64,000 bases of DNA. Source: Auanema rhodensis. Its lineage: Eukaryota > Animalia > Nematoda. Both the position numbers and the translations under genes were made by a program. The stretch spans positions 8,866,001-8,930,000 of the forward strand of contig OZ059894.1 in NCBI GenBank assembly GCA_964057225.1, read 5' to 3'. Of the stretch, positions 30,735 to 64,000 are shown piece by piece; position 1 is the first letter of the stretch, and every line of letters begins with the position of its first letter. The notes under the pieces are model-generated. The model was not told the DNA's origin. It saw only the letters and a list, made by a program, of their open reading frames with translations, and searched no databases.

Positions 30735-33700
30735 ATGGGGAAAAAGGTAAAAAGTGTATAAAGTTGCCAATGTAATTCACTTTTTAAAAAATTTAAGAAT
30801 CGACGGCAGAACCAGAATCAATGGGCTGATGATGAACCAGCAGAGCCTGAACAAGTAGCAGAGGTATTCCGAAAAAGAAACAACAAATATAGTCTCATTA
30901 TTAATAGGTATCCTTCAGTCCTAAAACATCGGGAAAAAAGGGCAAAAGGGGGAAAAAAGGAAAGAATCTTACCCATAATGGTTTTTCTACTGGTGCTTTC
31001 GGGGTCTTGGGTGGAGGAGATGAAGATGACAGCATGTGCCAAGTAGATCAAAATTGTTCAGACATGCAAAACTGTGCTCAGGTTTTACTGAATTAGTATA
31101 GTAGTAGCAAGCAGAGTTTTAGGAAAAATTTGAAGAAGATAATTCGTACAAATCTGTTCAGGGGGAGATGCAATATGAGGTCACACCAATCAGCTGGATA
31201 TAACGCAAAGTTTTTTTTAGGCAGCTGGTCAGGATATTGGTTTCACAAACGAGGAATATGAAAACGTGCAAGGAACACAAGATTCCCACGTCGAAAATGG
31301 ATTTGGATCCCAGCATAATGGCTTCGGTGGATCCCAGCATAATGGCTTCGGTGGATCCCAACAGAATGGCTTCGGTGGATCCCGACAGGATGGCTTCGAT
31401 GGATCCCGACAGGATGGTTTTGGTGGATCCCGACAGGATGGTTTTGGTGGATCCCGACAGGATGGTTTTGGTGGATCCCGACAGAATAGTATTAGTGGAT
31501 CCCGACAGAATAGTATTAGTGGATCCCGACAGAATAGTATTAGTGGATCCCGACAGAATGGCTTCGGATCCAATCAAAATGGTTTTGGTGGATCACAACA
31601 GAATGGTTTCGGTGGATCACAACAGAATGGTTCCGGTGGATCCCAGCATAATGGATTTGGTGGATCCCGACAGAATGGATTTGGTGGATCCCGACAGAAT
31701 GACTTTGGTGGATCTCAACAGAATAGTTTTGGTGGATCTCAACAAAATGGTTTTGGTGGATCTCAACAGAATGGTTTTGGTGGATCTCAACAGAATGGTT
31801 TTGGTGGATCTCAACAGAATGGTTTTGGGTCCAATCAAAATTGTCTCGATGGATCACAACAAAATGGCTTTGGATCCAATCAAAATTGTCTCGATGGATC
31901 ACAACAGAATGGTTTCGGTGGATCCCAACATAATGGTTTCGGTGGATCCCAACATAATGGATTTGGTGGATCCCAACATAATGGATTCGGTGGATCCAGA
32001 CAGAATGACTTCGGTGGATCTCAACAGAATGACTTTGGTGGATCTCAACAGAATGGATTTGGTGGATCCCGACAGAATGGCTTTGGATCCAATCAAAATG
32101 GTTTCGATGGATCACAACAGAATGGTTTCGGTGGATCACAACAGAATGACTTTGGATCCCAATGTGATGAATTTGGGTCTCAGCAAAACGGCTTCCAATC
32201 TCGACAAAGTGTTCATGGATCCCAACACAACTGTTTCGAATCTCAGGAAAATGAACTTGATTCCCAGCAGAGAAATGGTTTTGGCTCTCAACAAAGTGGA
32301 GTAAACTCGCACCACAGCGCATTCGGCTCTCAGCACAGCAGACTTAATACTCAGCAAAGTGGTTTTGGATCTTATTCAAATGGTTTTGATGATCAGCAAA
32401 ATGGTATATTTTATATATGTTTTATTTGTGCATTTCTTATTCATCTTATAAACATGCAGGATTTGACTCGCATAGAGAAGATTCGAATTCTCAAATAGAT
32501 AGATTTCCTTCATATCAAAATGGATTGGAAAATCAACATGGTACGAAACCTTCATATTCTTCTGTTTACAGTTTAGTTACAGATGGAGAGCAAAACTATG
32601 AAGATAATTATCAGAGTGAGTTAGGATCTCAATTATCCATAAGAAGTTCTGCATCACGGTGTAACGTAAGGAATTGTGTTCTGAGCAGTATTTATATCAT
32701 TACTGGTTATAGGAGAATGAAAATTACGATCGGCAATCTTATTCGGGCTCTCAAGCTTTGCTAGATGTGATTTTTTTTTCTTCTTCAAACTGTTTTTTAA
32801 TGAATAAAATGTTTAGACTGCTCATCAAGTATCGAGAGGAAACTCGAGAAATCGTTTACCTAGCCACAGTAATTATGATGATCAGTATCTACATCCCGAG
32901 GACAATCGCTCAAGAAGATCATCCATTTCAGTATCCAGTAGAATGTCTGGCGTACGTAGAGAAGTAAGCAGAATACAATAAATCTTTAGAAGATTTTTTT
33001 AAATAGAAACATGATGAAAGATACGGTACATTTGTTACTACCAGAAGTCGACAACCAAGCATTAGTAGCTATCAGGTAATATTCTTTGAATTTGCATATT
33101 TATTGGCACTGTTCAGGGTGAACATTTTGATACTGCCTCAAAATATAGCAGCAACAATGATAGTGCGGAAGCTCCGTCATATCAGCAAAATGTGGATCAA
33201 TTCAATCAAGTTAGGCATGCTGTACATGATTCTCTATTTGATTATGTTTAGATGGTTGGAAATCAACGTAAAAGCAAGTATGGAAGCTGTCAGTTTAATA
33301 CAGGATACGCTTTTTTGCAACCCACTACGAGGAGTCATAGTAAGTCTGTCCACACGTTGAATGCGAACGGAGATTTCAATAAGGTTAATTGTATATTTTA
33401 TCATGAAAGCAAATTGTTATTTTTTCATAGAACTCCGAAAACATGTGTGAAAATAGTTCCCACAACACTTACCGTTCGAACAGTCATATATTTGCCACAG
33501 ATTGTGAGGAAGGTGAAGGAATGGATGGTTTCTCTGAAAACCAGGTAAAATAGGAGAGTGTTTCCATCTCTATAAAAATATTTTAGGTTCCTATACGATC
33601 CATGATGAACGATGAAAAGTGCACAAATCATAGACTAAGCAAGGTACTTACAGAATTCATTTGGTTCTGATACATATTTTTTAAAGCTATCCATAAATAC

Positions 33701-36700
33701 GAATGCTGACGAATTTGTTCTTGTTGGTGGCCAACCTCCTCCAGGCGTGGTAGATGGGCGGTCAAGCTGTCCAGCTGGAAGAAGTCGTCGTTCAAGAAAA
33801 ATGATGAGGTCCACAGACTTTTTGGCTGATCATGAGGAGATGATGGGAGGATCAATCAGATCTACTAGTGCTATGAGTCGTCAGGTTCATTTTCGTCTGT
33901 AATAATTACTTATTTTTTGTACAGTCCTTAAGATCAACTACTGAACATGAGCTTATGAGTATGGGAATTGAAGAAGAAACTCAAGTAAGTTCCCTAGATA
34001 TGATAGTATTAGTGTTATATCACCATTAAGGAAAATTGTAAAGGCAGTCCTGACTATGTTGATACTTTAAGCAACACTGAGCAAGGAGTACGAACTGGTT
34101 CTAATCAGAGTGTTGAGAATTTTGTGGTGAGTTGTCAATGTCTTAATTGATTTTTCGTTTTAAAGACAGCTAATGAGCATTTCGAAAACAACTATTATTC
34201 ATCGGTTACTGGGGTACTTCATGTAAATCTAGGATCAACGGACCTAATATAGCTATCAATTTCAGAAAGCTAATACTGTTAATGGGGAGCAGGAGATTGA
34301 TGTACCATTGAATTCTGATAACAATGAGTTTTTCCAAGATAACACTCAGTTTAATTTGGTTTGTTGTTTTTACTTTATTTTTAGTTATACTCAATATAGG
34401 CTACCTCTGGGAGATCTGCTTCTGTTTCGAGATCTAGTTTGGTATTTATAATCTGTCTTTAAAGCTTTGAAAACTTTTTCTCAGGCATCGAATGCTTCAA
34501 AATCAACAAAATCATTTAACATCAGACAAGATTCTAAAACTAGTCTTGTATGGTTTAAGCTTTACTTCATGAAATAAACAACTTGTTAAGGCTTCCGAAG
34601 CAGCGATGAATGTGAACGATATCAGCAATAATATTGTGAAGTCTCGAACAGCTTCTCGAGCCAGCATGGTATCAAAATTATACCATCGTTGTAAATTGTT
34701 GTTTTCAGTCTGGTATCGATTCTGTTCAGCTCGGATCAGTTGGAAGCGAATTAAAATTACACGTTAGTCTATTTAATAATTAATTTTAGTTCCCGAAATC
34801 GAATTTAGGGTGAGGATGTGCATATACCATTCAATTCTGAGATAAACCATCAGCCAGTTCGGAGTAGATTGAATTCTGAAGTAATTGTTTTCTATAATCA
34901 TATTTTCATTGGGAGTTTTTCAGAGTTCTGAAATTCATATTCCATTCAATTCCGAGTTAAACCAACAATCAGTTCGGAGCAGACTGAATTCTGAAGTAAG
35001 AAGGCTTCTAGAATTATTTTTTTATGGGGACTCTTTCAGAGTTCTGAAATCCATATTCCATACAATTCTGAGATAAACCATCAGCCAGTTCGGAGTAGAT
35101 TGAATTCTGAAGTGAGAATGTTTCGAGATTTTTATTTCATTTACAGTTTTCCAGAGTTCTGAAGTCCATATCCCGTTTAATTCTGAGTTAAACCATCAAT
35201 CAGTTCGGAGCAGACTGAATTCTGAAGTAAGAAGGTTTCTAGTAAGAATGCGGTACTTTTTTTTCAGAATACCGAAGTTCACATTCCTTTGAACTCTGAG
35301 TTATACCAAGAGTCAACTCAAAGCAACTTGAACTGTGATGTTAGTGCATTCATCAATATATTGTTATTAGCGATATTCTAGAACGAAGATGTTTGTATCC
35401 CAGCCAATTATGAATTCAATCAGAAATCCATTCGGAGTAGAACAAATTCCTATGTAAGTTTTCACTTACAATTATTAACTATGTAATTCTATCAAGAGTG
35501 AAAATAATAAAATTCCGTCCCGAACTGAAAGCAGATGTTCAAGTCATCAAAATGTAAATTTTAACATCCTTTCGAATTCAAAGTGTGATTACAATTTGTT
35601 TTTCAGGATCAATTGATTCCTTCAAATGAACCTAACTTTGATATGCGTGGATCTTCACGTCAAAGCTTGGCAAGTTATATATTCAACTTATTGGCTGCAT
35701 AGCTGTGAAATATATACGAATCTTATTGTAATGATCTTTTTTTATAAATGGAATATTTAGACTCGAAATATGTCAGAAAATGAAAAATTATGCGAAAAAG
35801 CTACTTCTCAAGCTAGTCTCGTGAGTTTCTATATTTTCCAGTTTCATATCTTAGTTATCACTTCTAGGTACCGTCAAATATTGGAAGATCGTCACACGAT
35901 GTTCAGGTAGTTGAGTATAGTTTTTGTTCTTTCCTTATTGCTTCTTAGGGTTCACGTTTATCGTTGAGTCAACGCAGTCGTTCCGCATCACAATACAGCA
36001 TGGTTATTGTTCTAGATTTCTTGAAAATAATAAAATATTTTCTAGGGATCACGCATGTCTGAACGGGCGGAACCGTTTAAGGCAGACTCTTCACGTAGCA
36101 TTGTATGATTCAATTCTTTTTAATTGCACTAATTTTATTTCTAGAATTTGGAAAAAGATGCTCTAGAGAATGCTTCAAGTAGTCACATTAATGAAGAGTT
36201 TCGATTACGATCCAATATTGGTTCAACCTCTAGCATTGTAAGGTTTTATATTTTTCACTAAGCAATAGCTTTTTCAGAAATCAAAAATGTCGTCAAGTAT
36301 TGATCACTTTACCCCAAGCAGAGCATCATCTAAGTTAAGTATTGTAAGATTTACTATAATCAGATGTTTGCTACGAAATATTTTCAGAATTCTAAGAATG
36401 GTGATATTGTAAACGAAGATGAATTTGTTCGCAGTCAAGCTCCATCAGCCATAAGCATGGTATATAAATGCTTGTTATCGCTTTTTAAATGAATAATTGC
36501 AGGATGACAGGGAACTGTCTCGATCAAATTATTTACAGAAACAGAACTCTGGTTACAACTTACAATATGTAGGTTATAATAGTAGGCCACATATGATTTG
36601 TTATTTTAAGAGCTCAGTTGATAGAATCGATACTGTTGAACCAAATAATCGAAGCAGATCCGTTTCTGCTTTCAGCCATGTTCCTATACAATGCGTAATG

Positions 36701-39700
36701 AATTTTTTATATTTCTTATTTAGAATTCAAGAGATGATGTTTTTATTCCGAATGAATGTGCTCAGCACCGTAGTCGTTCTTCGTCTGAAACAAGCTTAGA
36801 AAACAGAAAGGAAGACCAGGTACCTCCTGTACCAAGAAGTAGAACAACTTCCTATGCCAGTCTGGTAGTTAGATAAATACTTTTTATTTAGAATGTGTTT
36901 ATAATTTCAGAAATCGGGTATTAGCAGAGAATCGTTGGGTCAGAGAGCAAGATCTCAAGCTAACATGGTTTTAAACTATCAGCTTTGCTAATATATAATT
37001 GTTATCTATTTTCAGCAAGATGAGCATTTCCAACAGTCTTTATCGCATCATAGTAGACCAACTTCTCAAGCCAGTTCGGTATTAACATTTCATCTACGAA
37101 TCTGCATAATTTGTTTATTCAGAAATCATTTTCTCGTGGATCCCAGCAGAGTCGAACACACTCACACGTCAGTCTTGTACGTTTATCTATATGCTTATTT
37201 AGTAATTTGAACTTGTAGGCTCGTGAGAATGATGAATATTATAATTTAGCACCATCTAAAGTTTTATCCCATTCCGATTTGGTATATATTGTATTGTGTT
37301 TTATATATATATATATATATATTCCATTTTTAGAATAGAACAACGAATTCTCAGCAACAGAGGTCTTTCACAGGCGTTTTGGTTAGTTTGGTCACTTTTG
37401 CGATTTTTAATAATAACTTTAAGAAGAATTCTACTTCATCTCATTCAATGCATAGGTCTGGTATATTGAGTAGGGCTTCTTCTAAATGTAGCGTGGTATG
37501 CTAAAAAGTAATAAAAACTATTTTTTTTTTGCCTGTTTAGAGCTTCTCACAGCAGGGTCTACATAAAGAGTATGTAGATGAAAACGGGAATCCAATCAAT
37601 TATAGAAGTCGCTCATCATCTTTTGCTAGCATGGTTCAGTTTTTAGTTATAATTTGTTTCATTAAGTTTTGTATAGAACAAAGAGAATGGCGATGATACT
37701 GAAGAAAATTTATTAATTGCTGACTATAATAGTAAAATGGAAAGTCATTGGGAATTGGTAGACTTCACTATATATTTTGATATATTAATTAAATTTTCCA
37801 GCCAACGAGTCGTTGTGCTTCTTCTTTGATGGTTGGACCTCAATCGAATATACCTGATATTGTAGTAGTGTCTCCGGAAGATGAAATAATCGTCCAGGAT
37901 AAGGTCTGGTTTTCAAAAATGCTTCTACCATCTATATAATTTGTTTCAGGCTCCTCGCTCTCAACAGTTACGTACTCCTCCTGCTCTTCGAAAAGCCAGG
38001 ATGCGTTCCAAGTCATCTGTAGATGTATTTCTTGAAGTTTTTTCTTTTTGCTATATATTTTTATTTAGATTGGTAGTGCAGGGATTTCGAATTATAATGG
38101 CGATGAAATTCCTCGTCCTATTATTTTTACGGATGCTTTAACTGTGAGTCACATTATTTCATTTTTTTTTGAATTATATATATTCTCGTTAATTAGTGTT
38201 GAAACGTTTTATTTTTTTACGATTTATCATATCGATTTCTTTTTTTCTGCTATTGTGAAATTTTTAGCCACAAGCAATTGCTCCTAAATCCAGAATTCAA
38301 AAAGATAAGTCGGAATCAAAGGTGAGATAAACTTAGCTGTTCATTTTTTGATGGAATAATTTTAGCAATGCTCTGAAATTGCAATTCAAACGGGTGAAAC
38401 TATACGTCTTCGACAGATGGCTGACTTTTCAACTTTTGGTACTACGCTGACGTCTTATATATCTTTAAAAAAAACATTCAGAATCTTCTACTGATGAACA
38501 GCCATCAATTGATCAAATCAATCGTGTTTTTTCAAAAAAAACTACCCAGGTTTTACACACACACACACACACATGGTATTTATACTAGTGGATTTTTAGC
38601 ATCCTGTTGCTCAGGTTCTAACGAATTTCCTCCAACAACAAAATAATTTGAACCAAAGTGCTAACAAATCTAATCATCAAGTTACTGTATTGCATGCTGA
38701 TGATAACGTAAGCTTTCGGTTTATTTTCTTACATCGTAATTCTTTCAGGACGAAACTGATGCTAATCATAATAAGTTCATTCGATCCAATAACGTGAAAG
38801 AGACCTCCAATGATAGCAAAAAACCATGGGACTTGGTAGGTGCTGTGGAAGTCGTTCCTAAGGAAGTTGCTGCTGAAATGAGGGATCAGGTACGAGGAGT
38901 AGGTGGGACCTCGCTGCTTGTATTATGTTGCCAATCACTAGGTGCTTGCTGAATCAAAACTTCCTCAAACTCCAACTAGTTGTCGGATTGCAAAAAGCAA
39001 ATTTGATGAATTCGAAAAGTATTCTAGAGAGGTTTCAGCATTTCAAAACCTTGAAAACGTTCCATATTCTATTTTTTAGGAAAGTTCTTATGATAGTCCA
39101 AATAAGAGAAATACTACAAATCAGTCAAACAGTTGAGTACTTGTTTGAATTATTTGAACAATCATACTTTCAGCATCTAATAATAGTGGATCATACCGTT
39201 GGGTTGTAAGTGATCCTAAAAAAGAAAATAAAGTTCCGGATGTTAAATGGTCAGATGGTCGAAAAAGAGAACCCGGTTATACAGTTCGGTAATCTGTTTC
39301 ATTACTAAATACTGTTTCAAATAATCTACTATAGGCAAAATGTTCGTGCTGGAAAGATCAGGGATTTGGCATCTATGTTTAATGACATGCAACATCAAGC
39401 GAGCAAAGAAGAAGCAATGTTGAAGTTGAAGTCTCTCTCAAATGATGAAAATAATAATGAAGAAATGCAATCAATGTATCATAAAAAAATGATATTAGGT
39501 ATGAATTTATATTCTAAAACTGTATCCTGTTATATTGCAGAAGAACCTGATCATTATCATGGAGATTATCATATCGATGATAATAGAAAAACAGTTACAT
39601 CCGAGAGAAAATATTATCCAATTACATCAACTGTTGATAGACATAGGAACTGCTGGTATTACTCGAATGAGTAAGAAATAAGTAAATCTACTTTGATATG

Positions 39701-42508
39701 GTTGTTCTTCAGTCTTGATGATGCGCTACTTGATGTAAATGACGAATCCGAACGAGGAAGTGTCATTGATCGCCACAGAACATCTACACCGTTAAATGAT
39801 TACATGGATCATGGTAAGGGATTTCATTATATTTTTATAATGTGATGTTTTAAGAGAATATGGCACATCAGTTTAGAAGAATACCATCGATCAGAGCTGA
39901 TGAACCTCCGGTTACTATTACTCGGCATATATCTTCCCCTCACAGAGAAACACAAATGTAACCAACTTCTATGTTTTACTAATAATTTATATTCTACTTC
40001 AGTAGAAGCAACTCTTCCAATATTGATAGAAGTACCAATAGTTTCAATTATGTTTCTAGAGGCAACGTGTCAGCACCGCCTTTGCCATCTAATCAATATG
40101 CTCAAATCAAGAAATATCCAAAGAAAACGTTTGTTTTAAGTTATCTCTATATATGAAGCTGTTTTATTTTATAGTGATGACTACGCTGAAATTTATTATC
40201 CATCTGATTCTACCCATGGAAAGTACTCGATAGATGAGAGAAACAAAGTATATACAGTATTATTTTATTCAAACCTTTTTATTTTTTAGTCTCTGGCTGA
40301 TGGTGACAGACATTCTAGTTTGAGAGAATCTGGGCAATTTCCTACTGACCATCAATTACGTCGACGCACTTCTCGTGGTAGTGAACATCCTTCCATTACT
40401 AATTCACAAAAGTCTCGGTTCGATGACATCATAGAGGAAACTGTTAATGATCACATAGATAATTTATTCCAGTTTGTAGACGTATGTTGAGTAATTGTTA
40501 TTATAACTAATGCTTGTAATTAAGGAACAACCTAAAAATAATAATCCTCCCTCATCAAAATCCTCCTTGCACTACTCAGTAAGCAACAACAGTTTATAGA
40601 GTTCTAGCTTTTTCATTGCAGATAAGTGGTTATCGTGCCATGCAAAAGTCTAATAAGGTACCTCAGGATGAGCCGCCTGTTCGGTTTTCCCCCTCGGTTG
40701 CTCCCCATGTTTCAGAGTTATCCGAGTGCTCAATCTCTCGATTGAGGAAAAAAGTTATATCCTTACTTTGAGTATTTTAAGAACCTTTTTTTAGGATTCA
40801 CTTGGATCAAATAATGGCTTCATGAGTCCACACCGATTTGGCGGTCGACCAGCTGATTTAATCGCATCCACCCCGAAATCCAGTCCAACACATAGACCTC
40901 CACCTGCTTTGGAAGAGTCTTATGTAAGCAGCATTTCTGAGGGTAGCCGTCATGAAGAGAGAATGGGGGAATACAAGCGATTGTTTAATGTAAGTTTAAC
41001 ATATGATAGTTAGGTTTTACCAGTATACTTTAAGAAATTGGTTCACCAAATCGAAGTTTGCAAAGAACAAATTGACATGACGCATAAAGTTCTTCTTAAA
41101 GCTCGGAAGGAGAAAAAACCTATGCAGGAAGTAAGAAAGACATTGTTTCTAAGTTTACAAATTTAATATAGCTCACAGCTCAAAGAAGTAATTTGATCAC
41201 TACTCAAAAAATTATGCTACTTCGTCGAGAACTACAGCATGTTCAAGGAATTCTACAGGTTAAATTAAAATATGAATATGTTATGACACATTTTGATTAT
41301 AGTTGAAAAAACAGCCTCCCCAATTGAATCATGATTTACGAGGATCCATGTCCATCTCTAATATCACTCTATTTTTAAATAGAGGCATCTCTCAGCGTAT
41401 TGGTGATAGTATGTTGAATTGAATCGAATTGAAATATTTGTAATTTGGTTTTTTATCAGATTCATCGTTTGCGTTTGTTGTTGTTCTCAAATCAGGATGT
41501 GAGCTAGAGGCAACAGCACCTGTAACTTTGCTATTCAATTATCATAATAGTCTGAAGCTTCATTTCGCTGAAAAGATTAGTTTTTATAATCTTCCAATAG
41601 ATTTCAGCGTTGAACTTGAGGTTTATGTTATGGTAGGTTGAGATCATCTATTCAGATCAAAGTATATTTTAAAGGTGTTGCCCGAGATGAAGAATGATGA
41701 AAATTCTTGCGCAACTACAATTGCGAATAAGTGCAGGAATTTACTAGGACCAGGTAATAAAAAAAATAATTTTATTAAAATGAGGGATATTTCTAGGTCG
41801 CAAAAATCATTCAAACACTGGTTTGCCTGTTGGTGATTTTGTTCGTTGTGGCTATCTTCGTCTTAATAGGTTTTAAATTCAAAGCAACGTAATTAATATT
41901 GAGTTAAGGGACACTACTATTCATGATAAGTTCTATTTGGATGACGCTCAATATCCGTTAGAAGGAACTATTGCTGTTACTTCTTCTTGCACTAGTCTTC
42001 CTCCAGCTATTGAAGTAGACTATAGAGGCTTTTTGGCATGTTCTTTTATATGCTTGAGCAATTTTGATACATGTTTTCAGACAATGTATCAATCAGTAGC
42101 AGGAGGATCTTGGGAGAGATATTGGGCCGCTTTACGCTGTGGATCTATATATTTTTGGAAATATCCTGAAGAAGATACGATGGGAAAAGTGGTCAACTTT
42201 ATTCGTTCTCAATAAATAATTTTCAATTTCAGCCACCCAAAGCTCACTTGCAGCTTCAGTCTTGCACAAAAGATGTGATAGTTCCTTGCACCTTGGATCA
42301 ATGTGCTCGGCCTTACGCGTTTACTATCGAAATTTTGGTTTCTACTGCTCCTTCGGTAATGAACAAGAAGAGGTACGGATATAGACTAACTATAGAGATC
42401 CATTTTTTTTTTTTTTTCAGAATTATATTAGCAGCCGATTCACGTGACCTTATGTGTTCATGGATTGATGCAATTAACGAAATGCTTAGTGTTATTCGCG
42501 AGCATTAA
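30735..42508 (+). CDS. ani-2: Giant anillin (ANI-2-like) with N-terminal FGG repeats and a small-exon-encoded Ser/Arg-rich disordered region, ~80 exons
   Basis: Manual stitching gives one frame from ATG 30735 to TAA 42508 with no internal stop. The C-terminus has a coiled coil, an anillin domain (FYNLPIDFSVELEVY; YPLEGTI) and a PH domain (GSWERYWAALRCGSIYFWKYPEE..IILAADSRDLMCSWIDAINE), most like recalled C. elegans ANI-2. Confidence 0.8.
31296..32200 (+). repeat. Coding 24-bp tandem repeat encoding (Q/R)(Q/H)NGFGGS
   Basis: Unit about CAACAGAATGGTTTTGGTGGATCC/T. About 23 FGG and about 33 FG dipeptides counted across the single exon 31221-32403. Confidence 0.95.
34809..35453 (+). repeat. Six tandemly duplicated 72-nt exons with their introns
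   Basis: Each exon encodes about SSE(I/V)HIPFNSE(I/L)NHQ(P/S)VRSRLNSE and is flanked by AG/GT; copies 5 and 6 are more diverged. Confidence 0.9.
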
Positions 42509-43019
42509 AAACTAATTTAATAATAGTCTCCTCATATTTATGCTCCAACTAACTATCTTTAATTAATATTTTTTGTTGAATTTTCTTTGTTAGTTGTTTT
42601 GATAATAAAACTTTTTGTTAAATGAAAATATTTATAGCTTTTACTTATGTAAGATACAGATTTAAAAATATTTTTTTTTGTAATTTCTTCTTTTTCTACG
42701 TTACTCACAGAACTATTTCATTTCGAGCGCGTGATACAATTTTTCTACATTAGGAACCAGGCAATTATTCAAACGATTAATTCAAAATATTGAATTGATT
42801 AAATAAATAATTGAGGTAAAATTGTTTAAGGAAATCTATTTTAATGAAAACTTTAAATGATTGAACGCCAATGTTGGTGTCGAGTTGCGCTCCACTTGTA
42901 ACGACAATTGGCGTCTAGTCAGCTGATTTTGCGACTGAGCGTGCCTTTATTACCCCAGCTTTTTTTCATGTGATATATATTCACGTTGTATTTTCAGCTT
43001 ATTTTGCATTGGAATATTA

Positions 43020-46000
43020 ATGTGGACTTCTAGAAATAGGAGATCTTATCAAGTTTGTTGTTATAATTATTTTATTTTTTTAATTGATAAAGTATTAGGT
43101 TATCGATGATGGTTATGAAGATTCCATTCCCGAGAACTTCACCGCCGCAGCCGGTCAATCTCTCCACAGTCGTATATTTGGTGGAAGTGAATCTGAACCA
43201 CTGTAATTTGAAATATTTAATTGAGTTTTAAATTTTTTTTAGAATATCTACTAGTCGTGATTCTTATAATTCACCTGGTCATGTGAACCAGCCAACTTTA
43301 GAGCCTCCTCAAATGGGCAGCAGTAGTAGGATTGATGAACGAAGATGGGATCATATTGAAGATTTAGATCAAGTTTGTTGCTCTTTTTTATTCTCAATTT
43401 CTATATAATATTGTAGTTTTTCTCGAGAATTTATGAATATCATCAAGGAGGTGGATTTATGTGCATAACTTTCCGTAAGATTTTGGGTATTCTACAATTT
43501 ATTTTTGTTGTGGTAAGTATTAATTATAAAGCTCTTTTTTAAAACTCTTATAGTTTTTCTCCACTTTCTTCTTGCAATGTGTAAATTATGATGTTATGTT
43601 CGCCAATGTAAATATAACTACTAGTGGTCAAGCTATATCGGGGAAAAGGCATTTCAGTGTAAGTATTAAATTTTTCTTCCTAATGTGTGAAATTGTAATT
43701 ATTTTGTTTTTAGGATGTTGTAATTCCAAATTGCGCAACTCACTTACACCCTTTTGTCGTGCTTTGCTTGTTATTCTCAACTGTATTCTGTATGCTTCGG
43801 ATTGTAAAGTCAATGTATTATATCCTGCAGATGCATGAGGTTTTTGTTTTTTTCCTATAATATTATATATCTCGCTTTAGATAAGCTCTTTCTATGGAAC
43901 TGCTCTTGGAATCACTGATTCCCAACTGGCCAACCTTACCTGGCATTCTGTTGTCAAACAAATTTGCGCCGTACAACCTAGACTGCATTTGACAATTAAT
44001 AAAGATGTACTGGAGCCTGTCGATATCTATAATCGAATTTTACGTTTCAAAAATTATTTTGTTTCCTTTGTTAACCAGGTAATTGTTTTCTAATCTTCCA
44101 GCATTATTCTCTTTATTTCAGCGTATTTTTCCTCCGGTTTTCGACATTCCATTTGTTGGAAAAACTGCCTATCTTCCAAATGGGTTAAAATACAATATAA
44201 AACGTTGTCTATTTCTAAGTTCAACATCTCCTTGGAATGGACCCTGTCTTAAAGAAGATTATAAAGATCCCGAGTTCCTTGATCGTTTAAGCACTCAGAT
44301 GGAGAAGCATGTTAGTTTCTTGCTTTTGTCAGATATAAAGCTTATTATTACAGATTTTGTGGTATGGCATGATTAATTTGGTCTTATTTCCTTTTATTTT
44401 TGTATATCAAATTCTTTATTCATTCTGTGTTATATCAGAAATGATCAAGAAAAATCCAGATTCACTTGGAAGTCGCAGATATTCTAATTTTGGAAGGTAC
44501 ATTCAAGATTGTCTTCCTATATTTTTGCTCATACACATATATTTTCAGATATCGGCTTCGGCACTTCAATGAATTAACACACGAGTTGGATGCCCGTTTG
44601 AACAGATCCCACAATTTTGCCAATGCTTATGTTAATCAATTTTTCTCTCCCCTTTTGAAGGTTTTTCGAGATTCACTGCTTACCCTAAACTAAGAATTGC
44701 TAGGTTATCGCTACCCATATTCGGTTTATGGTAGGAGCTGTTGCTATTGTATTGGGAGCATTAACTATGTGGGACGAGGATGTCATTCAAGTATTTAATA
44801 ACGATTAGAGTATTTGATTCATTTTTCTTTTTTTGAGATTGAACATGTATTGACGGTTATTGCTGTTTGTGGAGGAATCTTTATTTTCTGCAATAGCTTA
44901 ATTCCCGATGAGAATCTAGTTTGGCAACCAGAAGGCCTACTCAATCGAGTAGCATCTGAAATCCATTACGTTCCTGTGGAATGGAAGAATAATGTACTTA
45001 TCTTTCTCTTATTTTAATAATCGAAGTGCTCATATTTAGGCACATACTGAACAAGTTCGGCATGAATTTATGGAACTTTTCCAATTGAAGTGGATGTTTT
45101 TGGTGCATGAATTGTTTAGTCCTATATTCACACCTTTCATTCTTATTTTCTGGTAAACAGTATCAAGATGAAAGTTGTCTAGACACATGTTTCAGGCTCC
45201 GTCCTCGCTGCAGGGAAATTGTTCGTTTTTTCAATGAAAACACAGTTACTGTGCAAGGCTTGGGAGACGTATGTTCCTTTGCTCTACTGGATGTATCGCG
45301 TCATGGTGATCCAACTTGGAGTGGAGTACAAACTTCGCAACGTAATGGTATATTAAGTATTAATAATGAATATCATAATGTTTATTTACAGATGTACGTG
45401 CATTAGATGGAAAAACGGAAATGTCCGTTTTACATTTCATGTCAACTAACCCAGAATGGGTTCCTCCTCCTTCCACAGAACAGTTTATTAAGACTTTCAA
45501 GGATAGAGTAAGAATATCAATGAGCTTATTCTGATTTTATAATTTGAATTTTAGCTTTCTCGTGAAGTAAATGAAATGAACGAAAGTAGAACAAATTTAT
45601 TACGAGAATCTGTTAATTCTCTTCTTCCGACCGGAACAACTGCAGCTACTCCCTTATTAGGTAAATCGTTTATAAGTATTGATTTGAAAGTTATGTTCCA
45701 GGTAACGGTTTACCCAAAATTGATGGACCAGCTCCTCTGTTATGGGATTCTCTGAACAAGAATAATGGTTCATTGGTTGACAGTCTAAGAAGACCAGGTA
45801 TGTGAAGATTAAAAAGCTCTGTTGTATAATTAACATTTGAGAAGCTGACGGTAGTGTCAGTAGTGACCTCCGAGTTCAAACTATGTTTTTACGTGGTATG
45901 CATGATGAAATCAAGCAAAGTATGGCACCTTCAATGTATGGAACAAATGTATATAGTGTAAATAATCCGAGCCGTAGTCTTTTCGAAGTTCCACAATTAC

Positions 46001-56181: not shown

Positions 56182-59100
56182 TTAAAGAAACCGACAACCG
56201 TGAATCATTGGGTCTATTGATGTGGAACCGGCTTCAGGTAACAAGTGCATATGGTTCAGATTCCATAAATCTGTTATACGATGTGAATGATGCTCTCGGA
56301 GTGCCTATAAAGAAACAGAATAAATCTTCATGGCTAAGAATGAAATTTGCAACCTGTCGTTCGCTTTCAGTTGTTGCTCCTACAACATTAAAATCTAACA
56401 TAAGCCTATATGTCCATTCTACTGTGAAGAACGTAGCAGCATTGGAAGGGAAAGCTCTGAAGTGATGCGTTAAAATCAAATACTTCGCAATGCTTCTTAT
56501 ACCTGAGTAAAGTTGATCCAAGACCTACATAGAAACTACGTATGCCTTTCTCTTGATACGTTCGTTTTATGCAATCCATATAACTCTTATATGATTCATC
56601 AGCTTGAAACCTTGTCTTGATAACGTCAGCAGGGTAATTTAAAAGCCATGAAAACATTCCAGCCACACCTGAAAACAAAGGTTTATTGGTTTAGCTTAAA
56701 TCCGAGTAATCTTACCACCAGCTAATAATAGTTGAGGAGCTGTTAGATTTTCCATTTTTCCATCTTTACTCATGCTCTTTGTCATCCATTCATATGATGT
56801 GAAGTAAATTCCGAATGCAGGAGCATCTCTTATTAATGTCATTAAGAAACCTCTAAAAATAAAAAATAAGAAATAACTTTTTTATTTTTTAATTAATCAA
56901 GAAAGAAAGCAAAAATTGACCTGTTGATTGCTCGGAATCCATGTTGTTTTATTAAACTTTTAGCGGCATCAACTGGTGATCGGAATGCACCATGAGAGGA
57001 GTCAGACTGTAGCTGCATCAACAGCTTGAAACGCTCAGATGGAGCAGCTGAAATGAATGACAGTTAGTTATTTAATAATAGATAAAGAAGAGAGATAAAG
57101 AGAAGTTGATATAATAAAACGTACCAATAGCCGTCTGAGCAAGTCCAGCAGCACATCCGGCTAAGAAATGAGCTTTCAAGCTATCTTTATCCTCAAACTC
57201 CCGCGATACACTACCATGAACTCCAAATACAATAGCATTGATAGCTGTGAGAGAAGCTAATGGAGAACTTAAACCTGAAATTAGGAACAGTTATTTTGGG
57301 TAATGCCAACATTTCAATTATTTATGATTTGTCGTAAAGACACTATTTAAAAAAAAAATTTTGCAAAGCATTTTCACTTTCCATATCAAGAGAAACCTGA
57401 TGCAACTGTTTTTTTTTCATATTCTGTTGACCATGAATGACAACTCTTTGTTTAACATACTAAAAGAATTGCAAAAACTGTGAAGACACATGAAGAGATA
57501 CATGAAAAGTGAGATTATTAGTTCAACTTATACAAATTGAAACAATTGATTTCATGAGATGTTATAGTTATAAGATCGTTTTTAAAGATGATTCTAAGGT
57601 AAAAAAATCATATTTTAGACTATCCTTCACCGTCTCATACAGCCTGATTGCCAAATGTTGTGTGCTTCAACCAATATGTCACATGCGATTGATGAAGACA
57701 TTTGTTATCTATCTCTATCATAGAAATACGCAGTTGATGATAATAAAATAGTCGATCGTCAGGACTGTAGAATCGTTTGTTGGAATCCATAAGCTGCATG
57801 ATCTGTTTTTACTAATTTTTTTTCTGACATCATCCAAAGTTGACATATGATTTCAAAAATTTCAAACATCTTGACGTGATAGTAATCAAGTTTTGAAATG
57901 GTTTGAAAGCTTGCGGTCAAAAAAACGTGATGAACATGATTTACAGGAAAGCTCAAAAGCAACAGAAGAGATTGAATAATCTCTTTGTCTCTCTCCATAT
58001 TCCATTTATGAAGAGATTTTTTGTAAATTTAAAACTATAATTTATATTCTGTGAAATTATATATTCAAACACACAAGTGCTGATTATGTTCTTATATTTT
58101 TATAATTTGTTTTATCAATAGTTTGAAAAGAATCAAAACTTTTGCATGGCTGAACTGAGAGGGCCAAGTATGCAGAAGAGGGGGGGTGTTAGATATTGAG
58201 TTTTCAGAGGATTCACGAAGTTTGTCCAAGACATCAAGGTGGTCATCGTATATGAACACGGCCCCCACCATAAATCATTTATCCCTACCTGACATATCCA
58301 TTTCTGTCTATTGTCACCCCTTTCTACTTCTAATTATTATATGTAAATATAGAATGTTGAGGTAATATGTTAACAAATAAAAAATTGAAAAAAATAAAGT
58401 TTTTTTGAAGATTTACAATGAAAAGAATAGCTTACCTTTGAAAAGGCCATGGAAACCTTCTTTCTGAATTATAGTTCGAAGGCAATGCCATGTTCCTCGA
58501 TAAATTGCCCCACTCCCCTAAAAATAATTCTGTTCGGACGTTTTAATGAAATTAAATAAAAAAGAATTTGATAACTGTTAACCGAATTTGTCTAATGATT
58601 ACAACTCTATATTAAAGGGGTAATATAGATAGAACTTAATCGATGTCCTTCTAAATTGGGAGACAGTGATTAAGATCGATTTTCGTGCAAAATTGAGAAA
58701 AAATGGGATTGGGGTAATATCTTGAAAAAACTTGTCTTATTAAACTTTGAATTTCTGCAAAGCAAACCGTGCATGCTTCCTCTCAGATTTACAATGAAAT
58801 GGAAGTGCGAGGCAAAAAAAAGATATTACCTGTGGTTGAGTTTGAAGCCTGACTTTGATGGTGTCAAGTGGATGTCCGGCTAACACTCCAGCAGCTCCTA
58901 AATACTTCAATTAACTATTTAAAAAATTTCTTTTTGCTTTGATGGCAATATTCGAATCCATTGTGGTGCAATAATCATTGATTCTGTTTTATACATGAAA
59001 GGAATGAACAGAAAAAACGATAGGTTTCACCATAATTTGGGTTGTGATGGCCCTTGTTGTGAGAGATGTAATAACCGAGTCAAATATCAATCATTATATT

Positions 59101-61745: not shown

Positions 61746-64000
61746 TTACAAAGAGAGTACAGTATCGGTGCCCAAGATGCTTGCAGTTCTGCTGGCAACA
61801 GATACTGTATCTATATCGTGAAGAGTCCATTCTCCTCGTCCTAACAACCGTAATTCCATATCATGGAACTGCTTTAGAGAGTATCGATGGCCTATGGATA
61901 CGTAAGTTATGTTTTCCTGAAAATAAAAAACATTTTAAAAATAACTATAAAATGTCAAACTTGTTGAAGCAGTCTGTATAATTGCATTTCTGTTTCGAAC
62001 CCAATAGCACTTGTGGATTCATCCAAGAAAACTATTTTGGGACGTGTATAGAACACTCGTGCCAAAGATAAACGCTGTAACTCTCCAGGAGATAAAGCGT
62101 CAGCCCTAGAATTGAAAATTAGTTCTGCACAAGAATCCTAGAGCACACCAGTCAAAATCCACTGGAGTGTCAAAACCTTTACAACGCTCAAGCAAATGTT
62201 CCATTTTCACCCATTCCAAAATTTGAGTTAACCGTTGAATGTCTAAAATGAAGATCGGTTTCTTTCTTAATTTGATAGATCACCTTTCTCAACAGGAAGT
62301 GCTTTAATAGGGTATACTAACTGCTGTCTGAGTGTCAATGCTCCTGAAGGGAAATAAGGCTTCTGTGGAACAAATAATAAATTCGATGGACGAAGTCTCC
62401 AGTGACGATCAACTTTTCCTAGATAAAAAGAATTAAACCCCCTTGACATGTTCACAGTATTTACCTGATGAAGCGTACCACAATCCAGCGAACATTCTAA
62501 AAATAGACGTTTTTCCTGCTCCACTGTCTCCAGTGATAAGAACATTTTGCCCTTGCAATAATTGTATAGATAGGCCTTAAGTTTTTCATAAAATGACTAC
62601 ATAGAACGGCTAAACGCACAAGAAACGATCATGTTCGAAGAATCATTAGCAGGTGACAAGCAGGCTGAATCAACTGTTATAGCTACACCATCATCAGGGC
62701 AATCTTCCTCACGATCTAATCTTGCACCTGAACAAAACTTTGTTTACACTTTTATGCTATATAACCACAAACCTAGTAAAAACTGAGCTTCTTCCTCATC
62801 ATCGCAATCCCTTTCTAATGATAGTTGTTTCCCATGAAGTTCTTCAATCTAAATCGAATCTTGAAACATGAACCATTTGATATTTGAACTCACAGTACGA
62901 GCCGTATTAGTTTTTTCATCATCATCAGATGCAATTACAACCACACTAGATGGAACTGTGGATGGTGGTCTATCAGTTTCCAAACAATCGGAATGTAAAC
63001 GGCGAAGCTCTTCATACAATTCAACAACTCTGATAAACAGAGAATAATCTATAGTCTGATCAAAAATCTAACCTGTGAGTTAATCCAGCAAAATTTGCAA
63101 TCTTATCAGAAAGGCTCAATAAGTTAGTGAAGCAATATATCAGATAAAGATAGAAAAATGCATTCTAGGAAATAAAGAAGATGAATAACAGAAAAAAATG
63201 TTAAAACATACTCTTGAGACAATTCCGTTCAATTCTGTACCTTCCATATCATCATATGAATGAGTCATAAAAATCGGAATTCCGATAATTAGATAGGACA
63301 AAATACCACCAAAATATTCAAAAGCACCAGTAACAAAAGAGAGCACAAATCTCCATTCAGCAAGCTTCTTCTGTAAAAGCAAACATTTTCTAAATGATTT
63401 TGCTTTTAACCTTACCTGAGCTTTTAAAAGTGTTCGTAGTTTTTGATTAGCCATAACATTTTCTAAAAGTCCTGACTGATAGAAAGCTATAGATTCGACA
63501 TTTGTGCGGACTTCCATATGTCTTTGTCTGAAATGAGACGAATTGGGCTAATGAGCAAAATATGTTAGATAAAGCTAACCTAAAATCTCCTTCACGCTTT
63601 TCCTGATTATTTACTAAGCCAATCATAGGCGATATTAAAAACTTGTTAACAATAGTTACAATAAGGAAATATACATAAATAGTAACAGGGCCCAGCCATC
63701 CAGAACTATAAAAACAATTTAATAAAAAACGATAAAATTCAAAAAATGCTACCTTTGAAAAGTTAAATAAGAATAATAAGCTATTGTAAATGGAGCAATA
63801 ACTACTGGACCTAGAAGGTCCGTGCAAAGAATTTGAGTTGTTTTATCAACATCTTGTGTCATTCGTTGATCTCTGAAAAAATATAAATATTAAAAATAAT
63901 GAGTTTACATTTCTTACGGGTTGTCTAAAGTATCTGAAGTCATTGTCAACTTATAAAATGCATGTCTTTTAAAATATAAACGATGTAAAGTAAAATTGCT
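61746..64000 (-). CDS. pmp-3: ABC transporter subfamily D (ABCD4/PMP-3), 5' part outside the window
   Basis: [14 protein letters not shown]; [21 protein letters not shown]; Walker [10 protein letters not shown]; [11 protein letters not shown]; [13 protein letters not shown]; FLDESTSA; SIGHR. Confidence 0.92.

What the first reader, a model, noticed from the sequence alone, without database searches (positions are those of the whole stretch)
32713..38321. 46 consecutive phase-0 symmetric small exons: a micro-exon-gene-like combinatorial cassette
Seen: by my stitching, 46 successive exons (mostly 40-110 nt) are each a multiple of 3 and flanked on both sides by phase-0 introns. The later exons of this gene and the neighbouring genes use mixed phases. 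Such a run is very unlikely by chance. Inference: the region grew by serial exon+intron duplication, and any subset of exons can be skipped without frameshift. This gives a length-tunable linker with huge isoform potential, reminiscent of schistosome micro-exon genes but inside a cytoskeletal scaffold.
Basis: partly seen in the sequence, partly recalled or inferred. Interest (0 to 1): 0.85.

Follow-up and report, generated by a model that had tools for sequence, protein, structure and literature searches.

The report
Phase-0 exon array in nematode anillin
A giant anillin (cell-division scaffold) gene of an Auanema-like nematode carries a real run of about 45 small in-frame exons that arose by repeated exon-plus-intron duplication; available RNA shows them all spliced in together, so this looks like an ordinary, if extreme, repeat expansion and not a combinatorial splicing device.

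Summary
Intron calling that ignored reading frame, followed by curation, reproduces 46 exons at 32713-38321, all multiples of 3 and open in frame 0. Spliced RNA contigs from four runs of one study confirm the structure for 45 of them. The 57-nt "exon 11" (34166-34222) is absent from every contig. Exon 38 is 9 nt longer than first stitched. One intron is GC-AG. The run is bounded by phase-1 introns on both sides.

The gene is an anillin with a C-terminal AH+PH region. Its nearest relative is the Auanema sp. JU1783 protein. The JU1783 ortholog has only 17 phase-0 exons in the same interval. Window exons 13-41 correspond there to a single 39-nt exon.

Exons 17-22 are 72-nt copies that still share intron homology, the youngest event being a two-exon duplication. 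A serine-rich motif (S-x-x-S-hydrophobic) sits in register with exon 3' ends. Angiostrongylus and Nippostrongylus orthologs expanded other repeats at the same place, one repeat per phase-0 exon in Angiostrongylus.

Combinatorial skipping is unsupported. Contigs are unbranched across 26 exons, introns are near-minimal (median 43 nt), and JU1783 isoforms differ elsewhere. The likeness to schistosome micro-exon genes is superficial. This is a new member of a known kind.

The parts
30795..42508 (+). Whole anillin-like gene: N-terminal exons, FGG-repeat exon, phase-0 exon array, central region, C-terminal AH+PH
   Evidence: tblastn of the Auanema sp. JU1783 ortholog P0030 onto the window. Pfam Anillin+PH on the ortholog. 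Match to human anillin structures in PDB.
31266..32300 (+). Large exon of 24-nt tandem repeats encoding GSQQNGFGG-type FG repeats; lies upstream of the array and is not part of it
   Evidence: TRF period 24, 36 copies. ORF. The homologous region in P0001 covers aa 100-640.
32583..32665 (+). Exon just upstream of the run (83 nt, phase 1 in, phase 0 out); marks the 5' limit of the phase-0 run
   Evidence: DP model. Depth bin 32600-32795 fits. The orthologous JU exon 6 has the same phases.
32713..34126 (+). Exons 1-10 of the run, conserved with JU1783 exons 7-17. Coordinates: 32713-32766, 32817-32963, 33007-33075, 33117-33209, 33252-33383, 33431-33544, 33587-33643, 33687-33884, 33925-33984, 34031-34126.
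   Evidence: RNA pieces and depth. Window exon 5 equals JU exons 11+12 with no intron between them.
34166..34222 (+). Probably part of one 139-nt intron (34127-34265).
   Evidence: Depth bin 34168-34363 implies 93 nt covered in all four runs, and contig length fits only without this exon. JU1783 has a single 133-nt intron here. A 19-codon open frame has about a 23% chance of arising randomly.
34266..34358 (+). Exon 12 (93 nt); carries the I-P-L-N-S module, related to the 72-nt repeat exons and to JU exon 18
34400..37633 (+). Exons 13-41 (29 exons, all phase 0): the block specific to this lineage. JU1783 has one 39-nt exon here. Most of these exons end in the R..S..S-hydrophobic motif.
   Evidence: Exon table. 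Orthology map. Fifteen joints shown directly. Depth fit. Motif register.
34809..35496 (+). Six tandem units of a 72-nt exon plus an intron of about 43 nt (exons 17-22). Exon 17 resembles 19 and exon 18 resembles 20, so the last event duplicated a two-exon unit.
   Evidence: TRF period 115 (81%) and 231 (87%). Alignment A1. Exon identity 63-65/72 and intron identity 31/43-44 for the pairs 17/19 and 18/20.
35670..35760 (+). GC-AG intron (91 nt) between exons 24 and 25
   Evidence: Joint 35668/35760 with one ambiguous letter, which equals removal of 35670-35760 (GC..AG), seen in all four runs.
36724..36864 (+). Exon 34 (141 nt): two motif modules in one exon; probably an intron was lost between two units
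   Evidence: The translation carries two R-S-R..S..S-L ends. A contiguous RNA piece covers 36724-36863.
37219..37290 (+). Exon 38, corrected to 72 nt; the following intron 37291-37333 contains a (TA)n run
   Evidence: The contig holds 9 more nt between 36724 and 37802 than the 63-nt model allows. The tool notes reads cut at 37289-37331. The depth bin fits 72 nt.
37677..38321 (+). Exons 42-46, conserved with JU1783 exons 20-23 (window 42+43 equal the single JU exon 20). Coordinates: 37677-37757, 37802-37903, 37950-38024, 38069-38143, 38268-38321.
38366..38438 (+). First exon after the run (73 nt, leaves phase 1); 3' limit of the run
   Evidence: The contig continues from 38438 into sequence that starts at 38482. 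The orthologous JU exon 24 is 70 nt and exits in phase 1.
41303..42505 (+). Anillin-homology (C2-like) and PH domain exons, with mixed intron phases
   Evidence: 62-66% identity to P0030 aa 1881-2177, which carry Pfam Anillin and PH and match PDB 4xh3/2y7b. The exon 41462-41632 query found only anillin-type proteins among those I checked.

Best explanation
The stretch is the central linker of a giant anillin gene in a rhabditid nematode close to Auanema. The linker is serine/arginine-rich and probably disordered.

It is encoded by about 45 constitutively spliced exons (39-198 nt, median 72), each a whole number of codons and separated by near-minimal introns (median 43 nt).

The run exists for a historical reason. 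An ancestral block of about 17 phase-0 exons was already present. Then a phase-0 module of roughly 24 codons, carrying an I-P-x-N-S-E stretch and ending in R-S-R-x-x-S-x-x-S-hydrophobic, was copied many times together with its intron by unequal recombination or replication slippage. Only symmetric exons can be copied in tandem without breaking the frame, so every new unit extended the phase-0 run. Occasional intron loss fused units (exon 34).

The product is a longer linker carrying many copies of a basophilic serine cluster, between the N-terminal FG-repeat part and the C-terminal AH-PH membrane/RhoA module. These clusters may be kinase sites.

Shown: the exon structure, the RNA inclusion, the duplication of exons 17-22, the register between motif and exon ends, and the difference from the sister species. 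Inferred: disorder, phosphorylation, and the direction of change (expansion here rather than loss in JU1783).
For: Structure and RNA support.

Duplication of exon+intron units: TRF periods 115/231, alignment A1 with the 17~19 and 18~20 pattern and shared intron starts, and intron identity of about 70% against 88-90% for exons.

Motif locked to exon 3' ends: S at position -2 in 23/46 exons, S at -5 in 20/46, last residue L/M/I/V in 20/46. Of 23 S..S[LMIV] motifs, 14 end exactly at an exon end; 0 of 100000 permutations reach this.

Sister species: the JU1783 locus L001 was mapped exactly to 50 exons, with 17 phase-0 exons in the interval and no room for hidden exons, since the introns there are 133 and 104 nt. 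The outgroup transcript P0025 is also short there.

Recurrence: Angiostrongylus cantonensis has at least 24 consecutive exons of about 123-126 nt in whole codons, one repeat each, ending in ..S-Q-Y-S-I. Nippostrongylus has about 30 near-identical 44-aa repeats at the same place.

The general principle is published: disordered proteins tend to be built from symmetric exons that arise by internal tandem duplication (PMC3632108).
Against: DNA-level homology survives only among exons 17-22 and weakly exon 12. For the other roughly 23 lineage-specific exons, common descent rests on a short motif and its register with exon ends.

The direction of change rests on two short relatives, and one of them is known only as a transcript. 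Loss in JU1783 is therefore not excluded.

Constitutive splicing rests on assembled contigs from one study, which drop rare isoforms.

An extra contig in runs X3/X4 touches exon 36 and exon 7 and carries flanks that are not in the window. It is unexplained.
Confidence: 0.8

Rival explanations
1. One reading: the array is a regulated cassette system. Subsets of the phase-0 exons would be skipped in different sexes, stages or tissues, giving many anillin isoforms with linkers of different length.
For: All exons are symmetric in phase 0, so any skip keeps the frame. Short exons favour skipping in general (PMC6142364). One GC-AG intron is present, and GC donors are enriched in alternatively spliced genes, including in nematodes (PMC2490688). 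One predicted exon (34166-34222) is absent from RNA. An unexplained extra contig touches exon 36 in two of four runs.
Against: Unbranched contigs of 3492 nt and about 1860 nt span the array in all four runs, with breaks only at the repeated 72-nt exons where k-mers repeat. All 15 listed joints link neighbouring exons. Introns are 40-53 nt apart from three, leaving little room for regulatory elements, and skipping goes with longer flanking introns (PMC6142364). JU1783 annotated isoforms differ only at exons 4/5 and 5/6. Exon 11 is missing in all runs and has no counterpart in JU1783, so it is more likely a false exon.
Confidence: 0.1
2. Intron gain rather than exon+intron duplication. An ancestral long exon of tandem peptide repeats acquired introns independently at the same proto-splice site in each repeat, so phase and register are the same everywhere.
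For: The introns of the older units share no detectable homology. Intron presence differs between the two species at two conserved positions: window exon 5 equals JU exons 11+12, and JU exon 20 equals window exons 42+43. Intron turnover therefore does occur here.
Against: In the youngest units the introns are clearly homologous and belong to the repeat period. The Angiostrongylus array likewise repeats exon plus an intron of about 72 nt as a unit. The huge upstream FG-repeat exon has stayed intron-free. About 29 parallel intron gains are far less parsimonious.
Confidence: 0.07
3. Artefact: the run comes from stitching open frames across AG/GT pairs in AT-rich sequence, and the true gene model is different.
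For: One of the 46 stitched exons (34166-34222) is indeed not in RNA, and one boundary needed a 9-nt correction.
Against: Spliced contigs from four runs reproduce the other 45 exons to within 3 nt per 196-nt bin, and 15 joints are shown exactly. The ortholog's annotated model has the same exon boundaries in the conserved parts.
Confidence: 0.01

Closest known systems
Titin PEVK region (vertebrates)
   Same: Both are long runs of small exons, each encoding one module of a disordered linker in a cytoskeletal scaffold. Both arrays expand and contract between species by exon duplication and loss (PMC6469411). From my own knowledge, frame-preserving exon phases are a further shared feature.
   Different: PEVK exons are differentially spliced to tune spring length (PMC6469411, PMC3575840), and no such splicing is seen here. 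The PEVK array has long introns and LINE-mediated duplications. The motif, protein family and phylum all differ.
Disordered human proteins assembled from symmetric exons by internal tandem duplication (Schad, Kalmar, Tompa 2013, PMC3632108)
   Same: The general rule is the same: symmetric exons, predicted disorder, and origin by internal tandem duplication, with short linear motifs carried on each exon.
   Different: This is a nematode gene with minimal introns. The run length (45-46) is extreme. The phase is 0-0; my own recollection is that 1-1 is more usual for shuffled metazoan modules.
Schistosome micro-exon genes (MEGs)
   Same: Symmetric exons, so skipping keeps the frame. Many small exons in a row.
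   Different: MEG exons are 3-81 bp with long introns up to 5 kb, and they encode secreted proteins (10.1101/2023.06.21.545858). Here exons are 39-198 nt (none at or below 36 nt), introns are about 43 nt, the protein is an intracellular anillin, the array is internal to a gene of about 3000 codons (my estimate), and no splice variation is seen.
Fibrillar collagen 54-bp exon arrays (own knowledge, not tested here)
   Same: Long series of exons in whole codons, derived from a duplicated primordial exon and spliced constitutively.
   Different: Collagen exons encode a structural Gly-X-Y helix, not a Ser/Arg-rich linker.
Orthologous anillins of Angiostrongylus cantonensis (KAE9417828.1) and Nippostrongylus brasiliensis (Q1695_004652)
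   Same: The repeat expansion sits at the same position in the protein, just after the conserved N-x-D-E-F..V-G-G stretch. In Angiostrongylus there is one repeat per phase-0 exon, ending in S-x-x-S-I.
   Different: The repeat units differ (about 42 and 44 aa) and are far more uniform, so these were independent expansions.

Membership tests
Anillin (Pfam PF08174 Anillin homology + C-terminal PH) | Anillin-homology (C2-like) domain | tested here: met
   Window exon 41462-41632 is 75% identical to Auanema P0001 aa 1915-1971. That stretch lies inside the PF08174 hit on P0001, aa 1891-1999, E=3.5e-13. tblastn shows 63% identity over P0030 aa 1881-2005. PDB 4xh3 anillin matches at E=7e-26. Single window exons alone did not reach Pfam thresholds.
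Anillin (Pfam PF08174 Anillin homology + C-terminal PH) | C-terminal PH domain | tested here: met
   Window 41799-42505 is 62-66% identical to P0030 aa 2001-2177, which carry PF00169 and match the 2y7b anillin PH domain. There is also a weak direct hit of exon 42081-42191 to PH, E=0.03.
Anillin (Pfam PF08174 Anillin homology + C-terminal PH) | N-terminal myosin- and actin-binding regions | not tested
   No profile for these regions was available. The N-terminal part here is dominated by FG-type repeats.
Schistosome micro-exon genes (MEG) | Coding region mostly made of micro-exons (3-81 bp per 10.1101/2023.06.21.545858; 36 bp or less in the original definition, from my own knowledge) | tested here: not met
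   Exons are 39-198 nt with a median of 72. None is 36 nt or shorter, and 34 of 45 are 81 nt or shorter. The array is about a third of a much larger gene that also has ordinary exons.
Schistosome micro-exon genes (MEG) | Symmetric exons (multiples of 3) | tested here: met
   All 45 RNA-supported exons are multiples of 3 in phase 0.
Schistosome micro-exon genes (MEG) | Long introns between micro-exons | tested here: not met
   Introns are 40-139 nt with a median of 43.
Schistosome micro-exon genes (MEG) | Small secreted product | tested here: not met
   The product is an anillin of well over 2000 residues (my estimate from the ortholog plus the array). The array is internal, flanked by FG repeats and AH+PH. 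The signal peptide was not formally tested.
Schistosome micro-exon genes (MEG) | Protein variation by exon skipping | tested here: inconclusive
   Only full-inclusion contigs were seen in four runs. Contigs cannot show rare forms.
Tandem exon-duplication arrays of symmetric exons encoding disordered repeats (PEVK-like; PMC3632108, PMC6469411) | Consecutive exons of one symmetric phase class | tested here: met
   46 consecutive phase-0 introns bound 45 RNA-supported exons.
Tandem exon-duplication arrays of symmetric exons encoding disordered repeats (PEVK-like; PMC3632108, PMC6469411) | One peptide module per exon (repeat in register with exon boundaries) | tested here: met
   Of 23 S..S[LMIV] motifs, 14 end at an exon end; 0 of 100000 permutations reach this.
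Tandem exon-duplication arrays of symmetric exons encoding disordered repeats (PEVK-like; PMC3632108, PMC6469411) | Detectable homology of exon+intron units | tested here: inconclusive
   Clear for exons 17-22 and weak for exon 12. Not detectable at the DNA or HMM level for the remaining exons.
Tandem exon-duplication arrays of symmetric exons encoding disordered repeats (PEVK-like; PMC3632108, PMC6469411) | Exon number varies between related species | tested here: met
   17 exons in Auanema sp. JU1783 against 45-46 in the window. Independent arrays exist in Angiostrongylus and Nippostrongylus.
Tandem exon-duplication arrays of symmetric exons encoding disordered repeats (PEVK-like; PMC3632108, PMC6469411) | Intrinsic disorder of the encoded region | not tested
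   Only composition is available: S 18.7%, N 8.9%, R 7.8%, W 0.1%. No disorder predictor or structure model was run.

The most novel reading that the evidence does not exclude
The array could be an adaptive, fast-evolving length and valency dial for anillin. On this reading, exon copy number would be polymorphic between strains. A minority of transcripts would skip exons in a sex-, germline- or stage-specific way; candidates are the 34166-34222 cassette, the neighbourhood of the GC-AG intron, and the unexplained X3/X4 contig. The recurrent independent expansions at the same site in Auanema-like, Angiostrongylus and Nippostrongylus anillins would then reflect selection on linker length or on the number of basophilic phospho-sites in the cytokinetic or germline ring scaffold.
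Probability: 0.12. Interest if true: 0.65.

Novelty: new member of a known kind. Interest (0 to 1): 0.38.

Why it matters
This is an unusually clean example of how a disordered linker grows. About 29 extra in-frame exons were added in one lineage relative to a sister species. The youngest copies still show exon+intron co-duplication, and the oldest are reduced to a motif locked to exon ends.

It also shows that the central linker of one nematode anillin is a recurrent site of repeat expansion, with three independent cases. This bears on how anillin's reach or its regulation by phosphorylation evolves.

For annotation, the locus is a warning. Gene predictors and eye-stitching can add a false in-frame exon here or skip repeated exons, as the Angiostrongylus model does.

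Tried and rejected
- The first DP gene model produced several wrong small exons. I replaced it with frame-agnostic intron calls plus curation.
- Pfam on single window exons gave nothing useful. Family assignment went through the ortholog instead.
- An HMM built from the six 72-nt exons recovered only exon 12 at a 1% decoy rate. Family membership of the other exons could not be shown that way.
- All-against-all DNA comparison of exons and introns found only exons 17-22 and 12 above the shuffled maximum.
- Orthologous introns of the window and JU1783 are not conserved. This includes the long 124/128-nt intron before exon 46 (z at most 1.6). The long JU introns hold no remnant of the window's extra exons.
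- The two loose-end sequences of the extra X3/X4 contig are not in the window on either strand, not even as 12-mers for the exon-36 one.
- The look-up of encoding contigs failed for P0001 and P0047 but worked for P0030, P0025 and P0022.
- A protein search for the window's own annotated product or isoforms (P0030 region 860-1180) found only JU1783 and Nippostrongylus. The species of the window was therefore not identified.
- Rfam found nothing in 30-44 kb, and there is no notable ORF on the opposite strand.
- A paper search for Auanema plus anillin found nothing.

Full report
**What is there.**

The window is AT-rich eukaryotic DNA (about 34% GC). Its introns are very short and look nematode-like.

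I called introns from splice-site scores, length and AT content alone, ignoring reading frame. The exons left between them were mostly multiples of 3 and open in frame 0. The few exceptions were false introns inside longer exons.

Curation gave 46 exons between 32713 and 38321. All are multiples of 3 with no stop over about 1170 codons.

**RNA test.**

Four runs of one 2019 study hold 36% of the sampled 31-mers. By my arithmetic that is about what spliced RNA should hold, given exons of about 72 nt.

The laid contigs are spliced and show 45 joints. The 15 listed joints are exactly my introns after exons 21 to 35. Joint 35668/35760 has one ambiguous letter and corresponds to a GC..AG intron at 35670-35760.

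The listed pieces place exons 2, 4, 5, 6, 8, 10, 34 and 43 at contig positions that fit the summed exon lengths.

Each contig has one depth value, so bin depth divided by contig depth gives the number of bases covered. In the 23 bins that can be decomposed, this equals the model within 3 nt in all four runs.

This check also produced two corrections:
- The 57-nt 'exon 11' (34166-34222) is absent from all contigs. Its bin shows 93 nt covered where the model expects 148. Contig 1 then ends at nt 53 of exon 17, exactly where repeated 31-mers begin.
- Exon 38 is 37219-37290 (72 nt), not 63 nt.

RNA therefore supports 45 exons bounded by 46 phase-0 introns.

Their coordinates are: 32713-32766, 32817-32963, 33007-33075, 33117-33209, 33252-33383, 33431-33544, 33587-33643, 33687-33884, 33925-33984, 34031-34126, 34266-34358, 34400-34441, 34485-34547, 34591-34668, 34709-34762, 34809-34880, 34924-34995, 35040-35111, 35155-35226, 35268-35339, 35382-35453, 35497-35553, 35607-35669, 35761-35820, 35868-35906, 35949-36002, 36046-36102, 36145-36237, 36278-36343, 36388-36459, 36503-36568, 36611-36679, 36724-36864, 36911-36967, 37016-37078, 37123-37176, 37219-37290, 37334-37381, 37424-37495, 37541-37633, 37677-37757, 37802-37903, 37950-38024, 38069-38143, 38268-38321.

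The exact joints among exons 17-20 cannot be read, because the assemblies break in those repeats.

The run begins after an 83-nt exon that enters in phase 1. It ends at a 73-nt exon, and the RNA continues at 38482.

Exons are 39-198 nt (median 72). Introns are 40-139 nt (median 43).

With a phase-0 share of 0.45-0.55, the chance of 46 consecutive phase-0 introns is 1e-16 to 1e-12. In the rest of the ortholog, 17 of 31 introns are phase 0. The introns are not independent events, and that is the real explanation of the run.

**The gene.**

The 57-aa exon 41462-41632 finds an Auanema sp. JU1783 protein of 2175 aa as best hit (75% identity). Further hits that were named or scanned include anillin-type proteins of Necator, Ancylostoma, Caenorhabditis, Mesorhabditis and Angiostrongylus.

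The five hits scanned against Pfam carry the Anillin domain, and four of them also carry PH. The C-terminal 400 residues of the Auanema protein match human anillin structures 4xh3 and 2y7b.

tblastn of the Auanema protein covers 30795-42508 of the window. Identity is 62-66% in the AH and PH parts and 91% in exon 8.

The gene is therefore an anillin with three parts: an N-terminal FG-type repeat exon (24-nt repeats), the exon array, and the usual C-terminal module. The window's species was not identified. It is a fairly divergent relative of Auanema sp. JU1783.

**Origin of the array.**

Exons 17-22 are six 72-nt exons, each followed by an intron of about 43 nt. TRF finds periods of 115 nt (81% matches) and 231 nt (87%).

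In the alignment, exon 17 pairs with 19 and exon 18 with 20. The introns after 18 and 20 share their first 18 or so bases.

Exon identity is 63-65 of 72. Intron identity is 31 of 43-44. Unrelated short introns scored roughly 35-60% under a similar alignment scheme. The last event therefore copied two exons with their introns.

The other exons have lost DNA similarity but share a peptide module whose end coincides with the exon end:
- Serine at position -2 in 23 of 46 exons.
- Serine at position -5 in 20 of 46 exons.
- L, M, I or V as last residue in 20 of 46 exons.
- Of 23 S..S[LMIV] motifs, 14 end exactly at an exon end; none of 100000 permutations reaches this.

Exon 34 contains two such modules and looks like two units fused by intron loss.

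**Comparison with relatives.**

I fetched the JU1783 locus (L001) and mapped the annotated protein onto it exactly, giving 50 exons. Its phase-0 run has only 17 exons (JU exons 7-23).

The correspondence with the window is:
- Window exons 1-10 match JU exons 7-17.
- Window exon 12 matches JU exon 18.
- Window exons 42-46 match JU exons 20-23.
- Window exons 13-41 (29 exons, about 700 codons) face a single 39-nt JU exon.

The JU introns flanking that exon are 133 and 104 nt and hold no remnants.

A transcript-derived outgroup protein (P0025, 2214 aa, from a Logan contig) is also short in this interval. Expansion in the window's lineage is therefore more likely than loss in JU1783, though this is not proven.

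Intron presence also differs at two conserved positions. Window exon 5 equals JU exons 11+12. JU exon 20 equals window exons 42+43.

Strongylid orthologs expanded other units at the same place:
- Angiostrongylus cantonensis has at least 24 consecutive exons of about 123-126 nt in whole codons, separated by introns of about 72 nt. Each encodes one repeat ending in S-Q-Y-S-I or similar.
- Nippostrongylus brasiliensis (3423 aa) has about 30 nearly identical 44-aa repeats.

**Alternative splicing.**

Nothing found here supports it.
- Contigs of 3492 nt (from the end of exon 20 to well beyond exon 46) and about 1860 nt (from upstream into exon 17) are unbranched in all four runs.
- All listed joints link neighbouring exons.
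- The three annotated JU1783 isoforms differ by 2 and 11 residues at exons 4/5 and 5/6, outside the array.

Three points keep the idea alive at low probability:
- The GC donor; GC donors are enriched in alternatively spliced genes (PMC2490688).
- The unused candidate exon 34166-34222.
- One extra contig in X3/X4. It places about 61 nt of exon 36 behind at least 255 in-frame letters that are not in the window. It also places about 62 nt ending at 33691 in front of 78 AT-rich foreign letters.

Contigs cannot show rare isoforms, and the read tool's single call was used.

**Placement and novelty.**

Symmetric exons that encode disordered segments and arise by internal tandem duplication are a described regularity (PMC3632108). 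Titin's PEVK region is the classic scaffold example, with exon gain and loss between species (PMC6469411).

Schistosome micro-exon genes share only the symmetry. They have exons of 3-81 bp, long introns and secreted products (10.1101/2023.06.21.545858).

The locus is therefore a new, extreme member of a known kind. First-reader notes elsewhere in this genome report other symmetric-exon repeat genes; I did not check them. Two further notes cover this same gene.

Noticed in passing
window 34127-34265: A 57-nt open segment flanked by AG and GT (34166-34222) sits inside what RNA shows to be one 139-nt intron. It is a trap for gene models, or possibly a rare cassette. JU1783 has a 133-nt intron at the same place.
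   Followed up: yes
window 33587-33691 and 37016-37078 (runs X3, X4 only): An extra contig, absent from X1/X2, carries about 61 nt of exon 36 preceded by at least 255 in-frame letters not found in the window. It also carries about 62 nt ending at 33691 followed by 78 AT-rich letters not in the window. Depth times length is equal in both bins. It could be a paralogue, a chimeric contig or an unusual transcript.
   Followed up: partly
window 35670-35760: A GC-AG intron (91 nt), confirmed by RNA in all four runs. It is the only non-GT donor in the array and one of only three introns there longer than 53 nt.
   Followed up: partly
window 31266-32300: A single large exon of about 36 copies of a 24-nt repeat encodes GSQQNGFGG-type FG repeats at the N-terminal side of the anillin. 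It is conserved as a domain in Auanema sp. JU1783 (aa 100-640). It stays intron-free, unlike the array next to it.
   Followed up: partly
window 33252-33383 and 37677-37903; L001 5789-5966 and 7129-7305: The two species differ reciprocally in intron presence at conserved phase-0 positions. Window exon 5 equals JU exons 11+12. JU exon 20 equals window exons 42+43.
   Followed up: partly
L003 21366-27466 (Angiostrongylus cantonensis MQTX01000107.1): The ortholog has its own array of exons of about 123-126 nt in phase 0, separated by introns of about 72 nt. The annotated model jumps from mid-exon at 24004 to mid-exon at 24693, so it apparently skips several genomic repeat exons.
   Followed up: partly
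P0047 aa 520-1850 (Nippostrongylus brasiliensis Q1695_004652): About 30 nearly identical 44-aa repeats lie at the homologous linker position. This looks like a very recent expansion. The genomic exon structure could not be fetched.
   Followed up: partly
window about 42600-46000 (+) and L001 12390-14892: The gene downstream of anillin looks like ATG9 in both species. Pfam ATG9 is recorded on the JU1783 neighbour. In hookworm annotations anillin and ATG9 are merged into one model, so the synteny seems conserved across clade V nematodes.
   Followed up: no
window exons 2, 3, 17-22, 27, 33, 34, 41: The repeated core R-S-R-x-x-S fits basophilic kinase consensus sites (R-x-R-x-x-S). This rests on my own knowledge and was not tested. 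The same core occurs in the outgroup transcript P0025.
   Followed up: no
window 56234-56678 (-) and 62267-63827 (-): ORF fragments resemble a mitochondrial carrier protein and a peroxisomal ABCD-type transporter. I judged this by eye only.
   Followed up: no
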